Below, one piece after another: positions 1,870 to 44,121 of a stretch of DNA of 64,000 bases. The notes below the pieces were generated by a model that searched no databases, had not been told where the DNA came from, and saw only the letters and a list, made by a program, of their open reading frames with translations. The translations under genes and the position numbers were made by a program. The DNA lies in IMG/VR virus record IMGVR_UViG_3300035703_000005, positions 184,836 to 248,835 of that record. One strand, written 5' to 3'. The first letter of the stretch is position 1; every line of letters starts with the position of its first letter.

Positions 1870-4800
1870 TTAAATTGATGCTATTACACGTAGATCTCTA
1901 ATTAATGGTGTGAATGTCGTATTAGTTCCACTCATAATAATCTTAATTTGGAATCCATTGAATAATGGTAGATTTTTAGAAGTAAATTCATAGGATTTAA
2001 ATTCACCAATAGTTGAAGAAGGTAATACAAGTCTATCAGGTCTTCCACTATTATTTGCTGCACTTATCACTTGATTATTTTCATCTAAATTATCATAACC
2101 AGGGAAAAGTTCATATAATTGTGTAGATAGATCGGTATCAGATCTGAATAATCTATACATTACTCGGATATCACTTGTTGAATGCCTGTAAGCGTCAAAA
2201 AAGACTTTTAGATTATCAGATCCTCTTTCTAACCTTACAATTTTGGTAACATAACTACAAGCACTAGGATCATCTCTTAATGAATTGACTCTAGGATCTT
2301 TGGAATAATCAGAAATTTTTGAATTTAATCGGTTTCCAACAGTAATTAAATTTACTCTATCCAAATCAATTATAGGAGAAACTTTAGAATCAGTAGTTGA
2401 TAAGTTTACTTCCATTGTGAATGATTTTTTACCTGGGAAATCTTGTAAAAACTGATTTTCATTAACTTTAGAACAAATAATTCTTGGACTTGACAAGAAA
2501 TTATTAGAAGTAAGAGATATAGTTTCAAATCCCTGATCAACAAAAGCATTTATTGAATTATTATCGGGAGATCCGCCAGAAAAAGTTCTAATCTTAGCGG
2601 ATATTCCAGTTGATTGTGGAGTTAGAGTTTGAATGTTAGGTCTTACAACATTAAAAGATATATTTTGTGTGGCTTTTGGTGTTCTATTAGAAGAAGTTAA
2701 TTGTAAAGGATCATATGATCCACAACTCTTATTCTGATTAAAATATAGTTCTGGGAATCCATTTAAATTTCCTGCAGATCTATCAGTTCCATTAGTAGAT
2801 ATACCCAGTTTTACGTAATAGTAATCTAAATCAGTTGGATACTTCGAATGATCCGTTTCAGATAAATTATGAGTTCTGTTAATTCTTCTTAAAGAAATTC
2901 CATTCAATTCATATTTAAATACCTGTTGTGATGTAGAATAAGATGCTGGAATAGTAGAATCAATTCCTCTAGTTACGCCAGTTAAACTATTTGTTGAAGT
3001 GGTTACGCCAGTGTATCTAATTATTTCATCTCCGATTAAAATGTATCCAGGATTAAGAGCAGAGACTGGTAAATTTTCAAAACTTGTAAAAATTCCAACA
3101 GCACTTAAAGTTATATTAGAAGTAGCTGAAGAATTATAACTTGAATTTAATTTTTGTGGTTTTAGGTCAGATTCCAGTCCACTAAGAGTCACATAATCAT
3201 TTAAAGAATACATGCCATGATTATTATGTTTTACTTTGAAATGTAATCCGTCACTTATATTATTATTATAAGTTACAGTAGCTCCAGATAAAACTGTAGT
3301 TCCAGAAGTTCCGACATATATTAATTGGGAAGTACTATCTTGAATAATAGATCCTTGAATATTTTCAATTAATAAAGAATTAAATGATGAAATTACCCCT
3401 ACGTTATTAGGAATGGTTAAAATTAAATTTTTACCAAATCCATCAGTTTTTGTGTAATCTATGCTAAGAGCATCTCCATAAGCATAACCAGTTCCTCCTA
3501 TAGAAACTGTTGCAGCAACTGCAACTCCACCAGAAACAGTTAGGTTAACTTTGCCACCAACACCTCTTCCAGACAATGCGACTAGATCAACATTTGAATA
3601 TGTTATTGAGGATGAGGTAAATCCAGATCCAACTGAAGTAATCGATAATGTGCTTCCTATTCCTATCGCACCAACGACACTCTTTAACTTACCACTAAAA
3701 TTATTATTTGAACTTTGGAGAATAGTTACTCCTGGAGTTAAATTACTAACTTCACTTGAGGTTAAACTCTTAGCAATTCCAACTAGTGAAGATCTGGAAA
3801 TACAATCAAGAGGATTTGGTCGTAATGAAACAATTTGATTATTTCCGATATCCAGATCTGGATTATAGAATCTTACAGTGGTTTCTCCTTGATAAAAATT
3901 CGCTCTGTATAATTTTAACTTAAGATCTTCCAATTGACTTGGATCCCAAGTAGCTCCATTTTGTGATTTAAATAGGGAACCTAACAATGGTTGTTGTGAA
4001 ACAAGAATCTTTTCCGATTCTGCAAGATTAACAGTACTTATATCTTCTTCACCCATTCTCGAAATCCATACTGTATATTGATTTGAAGCAGATAATAGAA
4101 CTACACAATATGCATTACCTGTCTCAAGATATACTGGTGATGGGAAAGTGAACGTAGTAGGTACACTTGCATCTTCGGAAAGATTTACTTCTTCTGGTTC
4201 TAATACAACTTCACCAAAAGGTAATATTGTTTGAGTTGGTAAACCAGTCTGCATTGTTCTTACCTGAAGGGTAACTGGCAATCCAGATGTATCCTTCGTT
4301 TTAAAGAAAATCTCACATTTGGTCAAGAATACTCCATTTGCATCTGGAACTTCAAATGATTGAGCCAATGGATCAACCCATCTGGTTTGGGTAGTCGTTC
4401 TATTTGAAAAAGAAGTATTAGCTTGAAGAGTCGTATTTTGTTCGGATAATGTTCTGGTATCAGTTCTAACTTCTCTGGAGATATCTGCATTTCTAATTCT
4501 TAGGGTTGCATCTTCTACATTATTCAAAGTTCCCGCAGAAGTAAATACAGTTTCCGCTGTACTATCTACAGTACCAACAATTGTAGCATTAACATCACTT
4601 GTTGTAAGAGCAAATGTTTTAGTGCCAGTTTCAAAGGATGGTGTAGAAGGAAGTCTTGAATCTGGTATAAACAATGATCCGATTAAAGTTCCGGCATTAT
4701 CGGTAATCAATCTGACATTTTGAACAGTAGCAATAGCACCACTGGTTTGACCAACCAATTGCATATTTTGAACTATATAACCGTAAAATCCAGATGCAGA

Positions 4801-29027: not shown

Positions 29028-29252
29028 TCACACAGCCTTAGAGCACTTGTTGTTCTTGGTGACTGCAGCTGCATCACTGATAGCACCATGCAGGAATGCC
29101 CCTTTAGGAGCAGCATTCGCCCAAGCCCTCTGACCCGTGAGTGCTTTCACACCGCGACGGGAGGGCTTAAGCACAGTGTACTTAATCTGCCCCTGAACAT
29201 CAGCGACCAGCAGTTCGAGTTTGGTAGCAGTTGCGATGTTGATGGTGCTCAT
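29028..29252 (-). CDS. small early protein
   Basis: MSTINIATATKLELLVADVQGQIKYTVLKPSRRG...; start reassigned to the ATG at 29252. Confidence 0.6.
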   Translation of the reverse strand: MSTINIATATKLELLVADVQGQIKYTVLKPSRRGVKALTGQRAWANAAPKGAFLHGAISDAAAVTKNNKCSKAV

Positions 29253-29312: not shown

Positions 29313-29573
29313 TCAATCACGAAGCTCTTGGATCATTTCATCCAGCTCAATGTGGTTCAGCTCAGGGTCATTCCAGAGTACACCATCAGGGGTGCAGCTC
29401 TTACCGAAATCATCAATCATAAGCTCTTGGAACTCGGCATAATCATCACACTGCAGAGCAATGCTGTAGAAACCATAATCATTGCCAATCCACAGAGCAA
29501 CATTCCAGGTCTCATAATTGCTCCAACCGTTGTAGGTCTCTTGTGCAAGCTTGGGCTGGAAGGTGGTGGTCAT
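29313..29573 (-). CDS. conserved cyanophage early protein (YNGWSNYETWNVALWI family)
   Basis: Recognisable motif; GAGGA SD in the repeat leader supports the start at 29573. Confidence 0.7.
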   Translation of the reverse strand: MTTTFQPKLAQETYNGWSNYETWNVALWIGNDYGFYSIALQCDDYAEFQELMIDDFGKSCTPDGVLWNDPELNHIELDEMIQELRD

Positions 29574-29580
29574 GTGTGTT

Positions 29581-29654
29581 CCTCTCAACATGGCTAAGAT
29601 ACCCCATCTGGCTACCCCATGGCATCATCTGTGGCCAGTTATTAAGCTGTCCAC
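29581..29654 (-). promoter_or_regulatory. early promoter cassette (TATCTT -10, AGCCATGTTGAGAG leader, two-box operator)
   Basis: + strand CCTCTCAACATGGCTAAGATAC ... GTGGCCAG-N8-CTGTCCAC. Confidence 0.75.
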
Positions 29655-29771
29655 TATTCACTCAGTTGTCAAGGTTCTATGGTAGGCTCATGATCCTTTG
29701 TGGCTTGAGCTTTACTTAAGCTTTCTTAAGCGGCTTAAGCACTCAGCCCCTTTATGCACTCCCACAGAGTT

Positions 29772-29801
29772 ATTATAAGCCATTCAGAGGGCTTATGTCA
29801 A
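29772..29801 (-). promoter_or_regulatory. consensus sigma70 promoter (leftward)
   Basis: TTGACA (29801-29796), 18 nt, TATAAT (29777-29772). Confidence 0.75.
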
Positions 29802-29837
29802 GCATGAGGATTAGAGCCCTTAGAGTGCTCATAAGGC

Positions 29838-29879
29838 TGTGGAAAACTTATAGACTTTTTCCACAAGTGTTGTGGAAAA
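29838..29879. promoter_or_regulatory. DnaA-box triplet 1
   Basis: TTTTCCACA at 29838-29846 (-), 29857-29865 (+), 29871-29879 (-). Confidence 0.8.
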
Positions 29880-29947
29880 CTTATAAGAACTGTGAGACCT
29901 TATGTGTAGCAAACTGTGTGGGTTCTGAGATTTATGTCCGGGTGCCA

Positions 29948-29976
29948 TTGACATTTTAGCGGTCGTGTGATAGCCT
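29948..29976 (+). promoter_or_regulatory. sigma70 promoter (rightward, antisense to all genes)
   Basis: TTGACA (29948-29953), 17 nt, TAGCCT (29971-29976) with an extended -10 TG. Confidence 0.7.
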
Positions 29977-29983
29977 GCCCGCT

Positions 29984-30111
29984 AAGATCACAAGGTCTCA
30001 GAGGCTTTTCAAGGGTGCTAACACAAGGTCTCAGAGGGCTTTAAGACTCTAGAAGCACCCTAAACTCACATGGCTTTGCGAAAGAAAGCTTTAACAAAGC
30101 CATGTTTTTTT
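29984..30111 (+). ncRNA. putative ~128-nt small RNA
   Basis: Downstream of the + promoter; AGGGTGCT/AGCACCCT stem; 16-nt direct repeat; ends in an 11-bp hairpin ACATGGCTTTG/CAAAGCCATGT plus T7; no convincing ORF. Confidence 0.6.
30068..30111 (+). terminator. intrinsic terminator
   Basis: 11-bp stem 30068-30078/30095-30105 followed by a run of T to 30111. Confidence 0.75.
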
Positions 30112-30131
30112 AGCCATTTATTTTAAGCCCT

Positions 30132-30165
30132 TTTTCCACAGCTTTTTCCACAGCGTTGTGGAAAA
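30132..30165. promoter_or_regulatory. DnaA-box triplet 2
   Basis: TTTTCCACA at 30132-30140 (+), 30144-30152 (+), 30157-30165 (-). Confidence 0.8.
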
Positions 30166-30250
30166 GCTATCATAACTCATTGTTAGCAACTCTCGGAGCA
30201 CTAGTAGTATGTAACTCCACTCCTCTCTAGGTGTTGTTTCCGTTGAGAGC

Positions 30251-30403
30251 TTAGGGGTCATAACTCTCTAACTCTACAGCCCCTTGAGCATAATCATCAT
30301 AGAACAGCTCATCCTCTGTGTGATTAGCATAGTGATCCATGATCTCTTGCTCAAAGTCAAAGAAGCTTTCTTCCCCGATAGGGTGAGCGTTAGCGATGTT
30401 CAT
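30251..30403 (-). CDS. small acidic early protein
   Basis: Hand-translated 50 aa MNIANAHPIGEESFFDFEQEIMDHY...; ATGA overlap with the upstream gene. Confidence 0.55.
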   Translation of the reverse strand: MNIANAHPIGEESFFDFEQEIMDHYANHTEDELFYDDYAQGAVELESYDP

Positions 30404-30585
30404 TTATTCCTCCTGGTGTTGTATTCTCCGAGATTCTCTACATAAACCTCGTTGACACTTTCGTTACCTTTGAGTTCCAGAAGCTCACGCCAATTCCATT
30501 CCTTTGGACTGACACAATTTGTAGCATCAACTGTGAAGTCAAGAGTAACTCTGTAGCGCGTAACTTTGTCGTTGATTGTTTGCAT
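30400..30585 (-). CDS. small early protein
   Basis: 61 aa, RYRVTLDFTVD...PKEWNWRELL. Confidence 0.6.
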   Translation of the reverse strand: MQTINDKVTRYRVTLDFTVDATNCVSPKEWNWRELLELKGNESVNEVYVENLGEYNTRRNK

Positions 30586-30905
30586 TGTGCGATGTCCTTT
30601 GAGTGTAACAAACTACGTAGCTATTTTATACTGTTTGAGGGTTTAAGTCAACAAAATTGTCATACTTTGACAACACTTCATTGATGACTTGATCTGTGAA
30701 ATAATCCACGATTTCATCATACATGAAGCTAATAGTTTCAGGTGAATAATTGTTCACCCAATTCGCTGAGATAAATGTTACTTCGGCTGATGGCATGATT
30801 CTTGAAAGTATTGTGCATAGCTTGGATTGAAACAACTGTCCCGCCATGTGGCGAAGATCAGTAGAGTCGTGGGAACGATTGCGATAGCAAATAGATGGCG
30901 TTTTT

Positions 30906-32548: not shown

Positions 32549-32619
32549 TCTCAACATGGCTAAGATACCAGAACTGGCTGGTCGTGGCGCGATCAGTGGA
32601 CAGCCGCTCAACTGTCACA
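32549..32619 (-). promoter_or_regulatory. class A early promoter cassette
   Basis: TCTCAACATGGCTAAGATACC ... GTGGACAG-CCGCTCAA-CTGTCACA. Confidence 0.8.
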
Positions 32620-34470: not shown

Positions 34471-34544
34471 TCCTCTCAACATGGCTAAGATACAGGGCCC
34501 CAGCCCCCTTTGGCGGGTTTGGTGGACAGCCGCCCAACTGGCCT
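34471..34544 (-). promoter_or_regulatory. class A early promoter cassette
   Basis: TCCTCTCAACATGGCTAAGATAC ... TTGGCG ... GTGGACAG-N8-CTGGCCT. Confidence 0.8.
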
Positions 34545-35190: not shown

Positions 35191-35261
35191 TCTCAACATG
35201 GCTAAGATACAGGATCTGGCTGGGTTTGGCGGGATCAGTGGACAGCCCACCAACTGGCACA
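35191..35261 (-). promoter_or_regulatory. class A early promoter cassette
   Basis: TCTCAACATGGCTAAGATAC ... GTGGACAG-CCCACCAA-CTGGCACA. Confidence 0.8.
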
Positions 35262-40004: not shown

Positions 40005-40077
40005 CCTCTCAACATGGCTAGAATACATTGCCTGGCGTCCTCTGGCGAGTCACTAGGCCGGTTCCGGAACTGTCACA
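40005..40077 (-). promoter_or_regulatory. class A early promoter cassette
   Basis: CCTCTCAACATGGCTAGAATAC ... CTGGCG ... CCGGTTCCGGAACTGTCACA. Confidence 0.75.
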
Positions 40078-44052: not shown

Positions 44053-44121
44053 CAACATGGCTAACTTAATGCGTCAAGCAGTGGATTTGTGGATTTGGTG
44101 GACGGTTTGGGCTTTGTCACA
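44053..44121 (-). promoter_or_regulatory. class A early promoter cassette (variant)
   Basis: AACATGGCTAACTTA ... GTGGACGG-N8-TTGTCACA. Confidence 0.7.

What the first reader, a model, noticed from the sequence alone, without database searches (positions are those of the whole stretch)
29948..30111. Plus-strand ~128-nt structured small RNA sandwiched between the DnaA-box triplets
Seen: TTGACA-17-TAGCCT with an extended -10 TG on the + strand, the only convincing + transcription unit in a window whose genes are all on minus. The predicted transcript (~29984-30111) has an exact 16-nt direct repeat CACAAGGTCTCAGAGG (29989, 30022), an 8-bp stem AGGGTGCT/AGCACCCT and an 11-bp terminator stem plus T7, ending 20 nt before triplet 2. 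The terminator arm AGCCATGTT equals the sequence between the -10 and +3 of the class A early promoters, which may be coincidence. Inference: a primer or R-loop RNA for replication, an RNA with two repeated protein-binding sites (decoy), or a regulator of the DnaA-box element.
Basis: partly seen in the sequence, partly recalled or inferred. Interest (0 to 1): 0.8.

Follow-up and report, generated by a model that had tools for sequence, protein, structure and literature searches.

The report
Origin-like promoter unit between DnaA boxes
In a T4-like cyanophage, a conserved promoter fires a short non-coding transcript at an AT-rich block flanked by host-type DnaA boxes, which looks more like a replication-origin module than a structured regulatory RNA.

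Summary
TTGACA-17-TGaTAGCCT is the only exact TTGACA/TAnnnT promoter on the + strand. The 10-11 bp hairpin plus T7 is the only strong terminator on either strand of the 64-kb window.

The window is a freshwater T4-like cyanomyovirus. About 50 related loci, including cultured S-PM2, share one architecture: a sigma-70-type promoter, a transcribed spacer of about 26-149 nt, a conserved T-run/AT-rich block, then TTTTCCACA DnaA boxes.

Four things are conserved: the promoter, the first ~25 nt, the T-run/AT block and the boxes. The RNA body is not. Its length, sequence and repeat number (1-4) vary. The 8-bp stem disappears in near-identical relatives that lack one 33-nt repeat unit. The strong terminator exists only in the window's own small clade. 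RNAalifold finds no consensus pairs across the wider family, and no covariation or Rfam match was found. Metatranscriptome contigs cover the flanking genes but not this RNA, which is weak negative evidence.

Best reading, at about 0.4: a cis-acting origin-region transcript, as at T4 oriE/oriF, here combined with host DnaA boxes. Rivals are a repeat-bearing decoy sRNA, or DNA-level operator and DnaA-manipulating sites. No paper describing this was found in the library searched.

The parts
29772..29801 (-). Divergent consensus promoter TTGACA-18-TATAAT, pointing away from the element. Its spacer carries one copy of the repeat core TCAGAGGGCTT (29784-29795, + orientation).
29838..29879 (.). DnaA-box triplet 1: three perfect TTTTCCACA boxes in -,+,- orientation, lying between the two divergent promoters.
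   Evidence: (all 6 perfect boxes of the 64-kb window lie in the two triplets; 1.55 expected)
29889..29904 (-). Degenerate inverted copy of the 16-mer repeat (13 of 16), upstream of the + promoter and so outside the predicted transcript.
   Evidence: I2, I7
29948..29976 (+). Sigma-70-type promoter: -35 TTGACA, 17-nt spacer, extended -10 TGaTAGCCT.
   Evidence: The -35 (TTGACA or TTGCCA), the spacing and the TGn are conserved in 33 distinct subfamily loci. Equivalent promoters occur in all wider-family loci inspected.
29977..29988 (+). GC-rich hexamer (GCCCGC) followed by TAAGAT. This TWAGAY motif is family-wide: it sits at the start site in 'long-type' promoters and serves as the -10 in 'short-type' ones.
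29984..30112 (+). Predicted non-coding transcript of about 128 nt. The start is inferred, not mapped.
   Evidence: No ORF. No RNA-seq support found.
29989..30042 (+). Two direct repeat units, 33 nt start to start (29989-30009 and 30022-30042), with core TCAGAGG(G)CTT.
   Evidence: D5. Copy number is 1-4 in relatives.
30013..30061 (+). 8-bp stem AGGGTGCT/AGCACCCT, specific to this lineage. Relatives L125, L139 and L141 lack exactly one 33-nt repeat unit and with it the 5' arm.
   Evidence: 43.6% of cells paired
30068..30112 (+). Intrinsic terminator: 11-bp stem with an inner 4-bp extension (-18.4 kcal/mol) plus a T7 run. The hairpin is present only in the window, L125, L139 and L141. Other subfamily members carry the 5' segment in the opposite orientation.
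30098..30131 (.). Conserved T-run/AT-rich block (ATGTTTTTTTAGCCATTTATTTT...), the lowest-GC stretch of the intergenic region at 23-27% against about 43%. Candidate unwinding element.
30132..30165 (.). DnaA-box triplet 2: two direct boxes 3 nt apart and one inverted box 4 nt further on. Conserved in S-PM2 and many IMG/VR cyanomyovirus contigs.

Best explanation
The unit is the transcribed arm of a conserved, origin-like non-coding module of T4-like cyanophages. A host-RNA-polymerase promoter fires a short, poorly structured, non-coding transcript into a conserved T-run/AT-rich block. That block is followed, and in this phage also preceded, by cyanobacterial-type DnaA boxes.

Proposed mechanism (inferred): early in infection, transcription from this promoter opens or primes the AT-rich block, through an RNA-DNA hybrid or through transcriptional activation, as at T4 oriF/oriG and oriE. 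Host DnaA bound at the flanking triplets helps unwinding or helicase entry, or gates the promoter. The RNA therefore acts in cis, and its exact sequence and fold matter little. In the window's own small clade, a recent local inversion created a perfect hairpin before the T-run, so that here a discrete RNA of about 128 nt is probably released.

Shown: the sequence features and their pattern of conservation. Inferred: that the promoter fires, that DnaA binds, and that replication starts here.
For: (1) The promoter and terminator are unique in the window.
(2) One architecture recurs in 34 IMG/VR loci selected only by the AT block plus a DnaA box, in 33 distinct subfamily loci, and in cultured phages (S-PM2, Sf-FR1, DSL-LC03, S-SZBM1, S-RIM32, S-CAM3, P-TIM40). 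Each has TTGMCW, a 17-18 nt spacer and a -10 (often TGn-extended TATAAT or TATACT), aimed at ...ATGTTTTTTTARMCATTTATT followed by DnaA boxes.
(3) Selection falls on the ends, not the RNA body. Invariant columns are RNA positions 1-10, the TCAGA core and the last ~28 nt. The distance from TWAGAY to the T-run varies from 60 to 149 nt and is only ~26 nt in S-PM2. Repeat number is 1-4.
(4) There is no conserved fold. Relatives fold weakly, z from +0.5 to -2.6. A strong hairpin next to the T-run exists only in the window clade: -18.4 kcal/mol against -8.5 or weaker elsewhere.
(5) The AT block is the GC minimum of the region, and all six perfect DnaA boxes of the 64 kb flank this unit.
(6) Lineages without DnaA boxes keep the promoter plus an AT-rich stretch, which matches the minimal T4 oriF/oriG layout of promoter plus A+T-rich unwinding element. 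[quoted passage not shown]
(7) The phage encodes a helicase whose closest relatives include one annotated UvsW; UvsW is the enzyme that removes origin R-loops in T4.
Against: There is no direct evidence of transcription. Four freshwater metatranscriptomes gave contigs over the flanking genes but none over 29608-30091. Only one RNA run held 2 of 11 sampled words of the RNA.

There is no replication evidence of any kind. The cumulative GC skew shows no turning point here.

The strong terminator in this phage would stop transcription just before the AT block, which fits a released RNA at least as well as a primer.

The family RNAs are A-rich and G-poor (A 0.39, G 0.16), not the G-rich type that favours stable R-loops.

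The very high conservation of the first ~25 nt, and of the promoter spacer across marine and freshwater lineages, exceeds what a plain promoter needs. It could reflect an RNA seed or an operator.

The DnaA triplets could serve another purpose, such as DARS- or datA-like handling of DnaA.
Confidence: 0.4

Rival explanations
1. A trans-acting phage small RNA whose function lies in a conserved 5' seed (UWAGAUCACAAGGUCUCAGAGGGCUUU) and 1-4 repeated UCAGAGG(G)CUU modules. It would act as a sponge or decoy for a host or phage RNA-binding protein or RNA. The DnaA boxes would be a separate neighbouring element.
For: The 5' ~25 nt and the repeat core are invariant across 18 distinct transcripts. Repeat modules vary in number as in known multi-site decoy RNAs. 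Lineages L127/L128/L140 and marine L131/L135/L142 keep the promoter, 5' end and repeats without DnaA boxes. The window's RNA has a strong terminator and a significant folding energy.
Against: There is no conserved structure and no conserved terminator. In the wider family the transcribed spacer shrinks to 60 nt, and to ~26 nt in S-PM2, and shares no repeat. The repeat core also occurs outside the transcript: in the spacer of the divergent minus promoter, and inverted upstream of the -35. That points to DNA-level sites or promoter-module duplication. No complementary target was found in the window. No RNA reads were found. There is no Rfam match.
Confidence: 0.2
2. A DNA-level control region rather than an RNA gene or an origin. 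The repeats (TCAGAGGGCTT) would be operator sites for a phage or host DNA-binding protein that controls the two divergent promoters. The DnaA-box triplets would manipulate host DnaA, by titration or by DARS-like reactivation. The + transcript would be a by-product or an insulator.
For: The repeat core is found 4 times against 0.56 expected. One copy lies in the spacer of the divergent consensus promoter and one degenerate copy is inverted upstream of the + promoter. Triplet 2 (two direct boxes plus one opposed, 4-bp gap) resembles the three-box DARS core, in which boxes I and II are opposed across a 5-bp gap (PMC6868365). The promoter spacer and start region are conserved far beyond the two hexamers.
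Against: This does not explain why a near-consensus promoter is always aimed at the T-run/AT block at close range. Nor does it explain why the AT block itself is so conserved. No candidate binding protein was identified; the flanking genes are small proteins of unknown function. The repeat motif is restricted to one subfamily.
Confidence: 0.2
3. The promoter, repeats and hairpin are chance or decaying by-products of duplicated early-promoter modules and have no function of their own.
For: Modules inside the transcripts of relatives are near copies of the reverse complement of the divergent promoter's -10 and spacer. The terminator hairpin arose by a local inversion. The region is indel-rich.
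Against: The promoter geometry, the 5' motif and the AT block are conserved across very divergent marine and freshwater cyanomyoviruses. The promoter-terminator pair is unique in 64 kb.
Confidence: 0.07

Closest known systems
Phage T4 oriE (early-promoter-dependent origin with evenly spaced direct repeats)
   Same: A T4-like phage. A promoter that needs no viral factor. A cluster of direct repeats next to it. A non-coding or leader transcript implicated in initiation (PMC3016281).
   Different: The T4 repeats are 12-nt units and their role is unproven. There are no DnaA boxes in T4 oriE. Here there are only 2 direct copies (1-4 in relatives), 33-36 nt apart, and the repeat is confined to one subfamily. 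No sequence homology was tested or claimed.
[quoted passage not shown]
   Same: The minimal layout of a promoter followed within about 100 bp by an AT-rich element whose sequence need not be specific. The RNA body is unconstrained. A UvsW-like helicase is present in the phage.
   Different: The T4 promoters are MotA-dependent middle promoters, whereas here the promoter is of the sigma-70 -35/-10 type. R-loop formation is untested. In this phage a strong terminator precedes the AT block. Host DnaA boxes are added.
DnaA-box-containing origins (bacterial oriC; P1 oriR and iteron plasmids)
   Same: Clusters of consensus host DnaA boxes bracket an AT-rich stretch and direct repeats, with neighbouring promoters facing toward and away (like mioC/gidA at E. 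coli oriC; from general knowledge).
   Different: No Rep or initiator gene was recognised nearby. No DnaA-trio pattern is evident. A T4-type replisome is not known to use DnaA.
DARS1/DARS2 core (three DnaA boxes, I and II opposed)
   Same: The three-box geometry, with one box opposed across a 4-5 bp gap.
   Different: DARS are chromosomal sites that regenerate ATP-DnaA. They are not associated with a promoter-AT block unit. No function was tested.
Known cyanophage non-coding RNAs (CfrI of S-PM2; Rfam motifs wcaG, manA, glnA)
   Same: Non-coding elements of T4-like cyanophages.
   Different: CfrI is an antisense RNA at psbA. The Rfam motifs are structured cis-regulators with covariation. The present unit matches none of them and has no conserved fold.

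Membership tests
Structured trans-acting sRNA with intrinsic terminator | Own promoter | tested here: met
   TTGACA-17-TGaTAGCCT is unique on the + strand and conserved in relatives.
Structured trans-acting sRNA with intrinsic terminator | Terminator hairpin conserved among homologues | tested here: not met
   The 11-bp stem is present only in the window, L125, L139 and L141. Its core pairs are broken in up to 15 of 18 sequences. The hairpin next to the T-run is -8.5 kcal/mol or weaker in about 30 other members.
Structured trans-acting sRNA with intrinsic terminator | Conserved secondary structure with covariation | tested here: not met
   The 8-bp stem has 43.6% of cells paired. Whole-structure measures are within the range of the shuffles. 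RNAalifold gives -3.4 kcal/mol with no compensatory pairs in the subfamily and no pairs in the wider family.
Structured trans-acting sRNA with intrinsic terminator | Discrete transcript observed | tested here: inconclusive
   No contig over 29608-30091 in 4 metatranscriptomes, although the flanking genes are covered. One RNA run holds 0.18 of the words. These are contig data of low depth.
Structured trans-acting sRNA with intrinsic terminator | Match to a curated RNA family | tested here: not met
   Rfam 15: nothing at gathering score in the window or in 10 related loci, and only chance-level hits at E up to 10.
T4-type transcript-primed origin (oriF/oriG, oriE) | Promoter directed at a nearby A+T-rich unwinding element | tested here: met
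   The promoter ends at 29976. The AT block at 30098-30131 has 23-27% GC against about 43% locally. The arrangement is conserved.
T4-type transcript-primed origin (oriF/oriG, oriE) | Persistent RNA-DNA hybrid used as leading-strand primer; autonomous replication of the cloned segment during infection | not testable with these tools
   Needs S9.6/DRIP, RNase H mapping and a plasmid replication assay.
T4-type transcript-primed origin (oriF/oriG, oriE) | Evenly spaced direct repeats (oriE type) | tested here: inconclusive
   Two direct copies 33 nt apart plus one inverted degenerate copy. Relatives have 1-4 copies spaced 33-36 nt. Absent from the wider family.
T4-type transcript-primed origin (oriF/oriG, oriE) | Position at a switch of transcription direction or nucleotide skew | tested here: inconclusive
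   Divergent promoters are present, but all genes are on the minus strand and the cumulative GC skew has no turning point at 30 kb. The review notes that not all T4 origins show this feature either.
DnaA-dependent origin | Cluster of consensus DnaA boxes next to an AT-rich element | tested here: met
   Six perfect TTTTCCACA boxes in two triplets against 1.55 expected in 64 kb. The AT block abuts triplet 2. That this is the cyanobacterial box consensus rests on general knowledge.
DnaA-dependent origin | DnaA binding and DnaA-dependent unwinding or initiation | not testable with these tools
   Needs EMSA or ChIP with host DnaA, and replication assays.
DARS-like DnaA-reactivating element | Three-box core with boxes I and II opposed | tested here: met
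   Triplet 2 has two direct boxes and one inverted box with a 4-nt gap, against a 5-bp gap in DARS. The match is in geometry only; function was not tested.

The most novel reading that the evidence does not exclude
T4-like cyanophages carry a dedicated replication origin in which a host-polymerase transcript primes or opens a conserved AT-rich block, and host DnaA is recruited through consensus DnaA-box triplets. This would be a DnaA-assisted, transcript-primed origin in a T4-type phage, a group thought to initiate without DnaA. The ~128-nt RNA of this window would be its primer or activator.
Probability: 0.3. Interest if true: 0.75.

Novelty: new variant of a known kind. Interest (0 to 1): 0.6.

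Why it matters
Replication origins of cyanomyoviruses, which are among the most abundant phages in the oceans and in lakes, have to my knowledge not been mapped. The T4 paradigm has no role for host DnaA. This conserved promoter-AT block-DnaA box module gives a concrete, testable candidate origin, or else a device for manipulating host DnaA. It is present in the cultured model S-PM2, where it can be mutated and mapped. It would also link phage replication to the host's initiator status.

Tried and rejected
- Rfam at gathering and permissive thresholds, on the window and on 10 related loci: nothing.
- blastn of the region against 50,697 phage records: only the 34-nt DnaA triplet of S-PM2. A typical relative's region hit 37 cyanophage records, always in unannotated intergenic DNA. 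A low-GC relative hit one record.
- RNA evidence: 22 RNA runs shared words with the 1.3-kb stretch, but the four that were laid covered only the flanking genes. A search with the 135-nt RNA alone found 19 DNA runs and one weak RNA run.
It says nothing about host oriC.
- Literature: no paper linking cyanophages with DnaA boxes or origins, or describing this RNA. The Syn9 transcriptome paper and the T4 oriE paper are not held.
- Inverted repeat spanning the promoter (I8): not maintained in relatives by eye, so dropped.
- G-rich or purine-rich R-loop signature: only a modest purine excess, 0.55 against 0.48, due to A and not G. This is not supportive.
- 5' hairpin AGAUC/GGUCU: 98% paired but essentially invariant, so uninformative.
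- Coding potential: there is no ORF in the RNA. By my own reading, the minus-strand ORF across triplet 2 (30118-30261) reads the boxes in a different frame in relatives, so it is not a gene.
- A minus-strand T4-late-promoter-like AATAAATG in the AT block, and a 5-8 codon minus-strand micro-ORF there. Both were seen by eye, both are absent from S-PM2, and neither was pursued.

Full report
What the window is. The large ORFs match T4-type baseplate wedge proteins and a helicase. The helicase's closest relatives are Synechococcus myoviruses at up to 67% identity, and one of them is annotated UvsW. The region is identical to IMG/VR contig 3300035703_000005, which is 248,835 bp long. The RNA sequence occurs in many freshwater DNA metagenomes. 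The window is therefore an uncultured freshwater T4-like cyanomyovirus. The finding lies in a ~660-bp non-coding gap (29592-30250) between small minus-strand genes of unknown function.

The 16-mer is exact at 29989 and 30022, and a degenerate inverted copy lies at 29889-29904. A scan of the whole window found a single + strand TTGACA-N16-18-TAnnnT, this one, with a TG extension. It also found a single perfect hairpin of at least 8 bp followed by at least six T on either strand, also this one. All six perfect TTTTCCACA boxes of the window are in the two triplets that flank the unit. The predicted 130-nt RNA folds at -40.8 kcal/mol, z = -3.78.

Relatives. Three pattern scans recovered homologous loci: the DnaA triplet, the T-run/AT block, and the -10/start region. 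Cultured S-PM2 is among them, and other cultured cyanomyoviruses were found by blastn.

Among 34 loci chosen only for the AT block plus a nearby DnaA box, every lineage inspected has a near-consensus -35 (TTGACA/T or TTGCCA/T). The spacer is 17 nt, or 18 in two related loci, and leads to a -10-like hexamer on the same strand, aimed at the block. Two forms exist. In the 'long' form, which includes the window, a TGn-extended -10 (TATAAT, TATACT or TAGCCT) is followed by a GC-rich hexamer and then a TWAGAY motif. In the 'short' form, TWAGAY itself sits 17 nt from the -35.

After the promoter comes a spacer of 60-149 nt, measured from TWAGAY to the T-run; in S-PM2 it is only about 26 nt. Next is a block conserved at the sequence level (AAACAC..ATGTTTTTTTARMCATTTATT), and then the DnaA boxes. 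Some lineages (L031, the window subfamily) also have boxes behind the promoter.

The RNA body is not conserved. In the window's own subfamily there are 33 distinct loci and 18 distinct transcripts, of 87, 97, 107, 120 or 130 nt. The invariant positions are the first 10 nt, the TCAGA core, and the last ~28 nt (AAAGCTT...ATGTTTTTTTA). Repeat modules number one to four.

L125, L139 and L141 are the window sequence minus exactly one 33-nt unit, so they lack the 5' arm of the 8-bp stem. Counted on the alignment, that stem is paired in 43.6% of cells. The outer eight pairs of the terminator exist only in the window clade, and the core pairs are broken in up to 15 of 18 sequences. The 5' hairpin is essentially invariant and therefore uninformative. 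No measure clearly exceeds the shuffles.

Other subfamily members carry the terminator's 5' segment in the opposite orientation (CAAAGCC instead of GGCTTTG). The perfect hairpin therefore looks like a recent local inversion. RNAalifold finds only a weak A-run/U-run pairing in the subfamily and no pairs in a 19-sequence sample of the wider family. Relatives fold weakly, z from +0.5 to -2.6, against -3.8 and -4.1 in the window clade. A strong hairpin next to the T-run is unique to that clade. The family RNAs are A-rich and G-poor. Rfam has no match.

Is it transcribed? This remains unknown. Many freshwater metatranscriptomes share words with the 1.3-kb stretch. In the four that were laid, however, contigs cover the flanking genes (29478-29537, 30208-30310, 30400-30600), and one covers the AT block and boxes (30102-30152). 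None covers 29608-30091. A search with the RNA alone returned 19 DNA runs and one RNA run holding 2 of 11 sampled words. These are low-depth contigs, partly from relatives, and small RNAs are often lost in library preparation. The result is therefore only a weak negative.

Interpretation. Selection acts on a promoter, its start region, an AT-rich block a short and variable distance downstream, and DnaA boxes. It does not act on the length, sequence or fold of what is transcribed. That is the signature of a cis-acting arrangement.

The closest documented parallels are the T4 origins (PMC3016281). [quoted passage not shown] The transcript forms a persistent R-loop there, independent of specific sequence. 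[quoted passage not shown]

The present module adds consensus host DnaA boxes, as in bacterial and plasmid origins. I therefore read the unit as the transcribed arm of an origin-like module, with confidence about 0.4. In this particular phage the new hairpin probably makes the transcript discrete, at about 128 nt.

Points against this reading:
- There is no replication or R-loop evidence.
- There is no GC-skew turning point.
- The RNA is not G-rich.
- The terminator precedes the AT block.
- The 5' region is more conserved than a plain promoter requires.

Rivals.
(a) A trans-acting decoy or seed sRNA. This is supported by the invariant 5' end, the variable number of repeat modules, and lineages that keep the promoter and repeats without DnaA boxes. 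It is weakened by the absence of a conserved fold or terminator, and by the ~26-60 nt spacers elsewhere in the family.
(b) A DNA-level control region. The repeat core TCAGAGGGCTT also lies in the spacer of the divergent consensus promoter and, inverted, upstream of the -35 (4 hits against 0.56 expected). Modules inside relatives' transcripts copy that promoter's -10 and spacer. Triplet 2 has the geometry of the DARS core.
(c) Decaying promoter duplications with no function. This is unlikely given the breadth of conservation.

Prior description. The literature searches found no description of DnaA boxes, origins or this RNA in cyanophages. The library is incomplete, and some key papers are not held. 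I class the unit as a new variant of a known kind: a transcript-associated phage origin, here combined with host DnaA boxes.

Noticed in passing
window 29784-29795 (+), 29122-29133 (-), 29998-30009, 30031-30042: The repeat core TCAGAGG(G)CTT occurs 4 times against 0.56 expected. One copy sits in the 18-nt spacer of the divergent consensus promoter. Modules inside relatives' transcripts (for example in L014 and L004) are near copies of that promoter's -10 and spacer in reverse complement. This suggests that the repeats arose by duplication of promoter modules, or that one factor binds all of them.
   Followed up: partly
window 29587-29595, 32553-32561, 34478-34486, 35195-35203, 40011-40019, 44054-44062 (all minus strand): A recurrent ~75-nt minus-strand motif upstream of small genes. 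It has a GTGACAG / GGCTGTCCAC part, then GCCAG, then TATCTT-AGCCATGTT-GAGAGG and the ATG. It has a -10-like TATCTT but no TTGACA-type -35.
   Followed up: partly
L011 about 3960-4400 and L126 (homologous place), + strand in promoter orientation: In two relatives an HNH homing-endonuclease-like ORF sits on the + strand about 190 nt downstream of the conserved + promoter. The AT block and DnaA triplet are largely replaced. A mobile gene seems to have landed behind this promoter.
   Followed up: no
L001 (AJ630128.1 16731-21764), tRNA features at locus 2432-2588 and elsewhere: The S-PM2 GenBank record annotates several tRNAs over this locus, some overlapping CDSs. ARAGORN finds no tRNA in the 5-kb stretch, and Rfam finds none in the equivalent IMG/VR locus. 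The coordinates of those features appear to be wrong.
   Followed up: yes
window 29702-29745; S-PM2 L001 2150-2330: CTTAAG-type short direct repeats lie in the long 5' leader of the divergent minus-strand transcript. S-PM2 and other relatives have AAATCTTAAG / GAGATTT repeat arrays at the equivalent place. They may be part of the same origin-like region or a separate leader element.
   Followed up: no
L151-L270 (genome contigs): The exact three-box pattern (two direct TTTTCCACA 3 nt apart, then an inverted box 4 nt on) occurs in more than 120 bacterial genomes. In the rows shown these are mostly Pyrinomonadaceae (Acidobacteriota) and some Clostridia. The sites are presumably chromosomal DnaA-binding sites with the same geometry.
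   Followed up: no
window 1-26000 versus 27000-64000: There is a sharp compositional break. The structural module, with giant ORFs of 2501 and 4262 aa, has about 30% GC. The region of small genes has 40-46% GC. All genes are on the minus strand.
   Followed up: no
L127, L128, L130, L140 (promoter orientation, +20 to +290): One lineage has three or four ~36-nt tandem units (AAGATCACAAGGTCTCAGCACATTTATAAGGACAT) after the same promoter. At the conserved 3' block it has an A-run in place of the T-run, and it has no DnaA boxes. The promoter-repeat unit can therefore exist without the boxes.
   Followed up: partly
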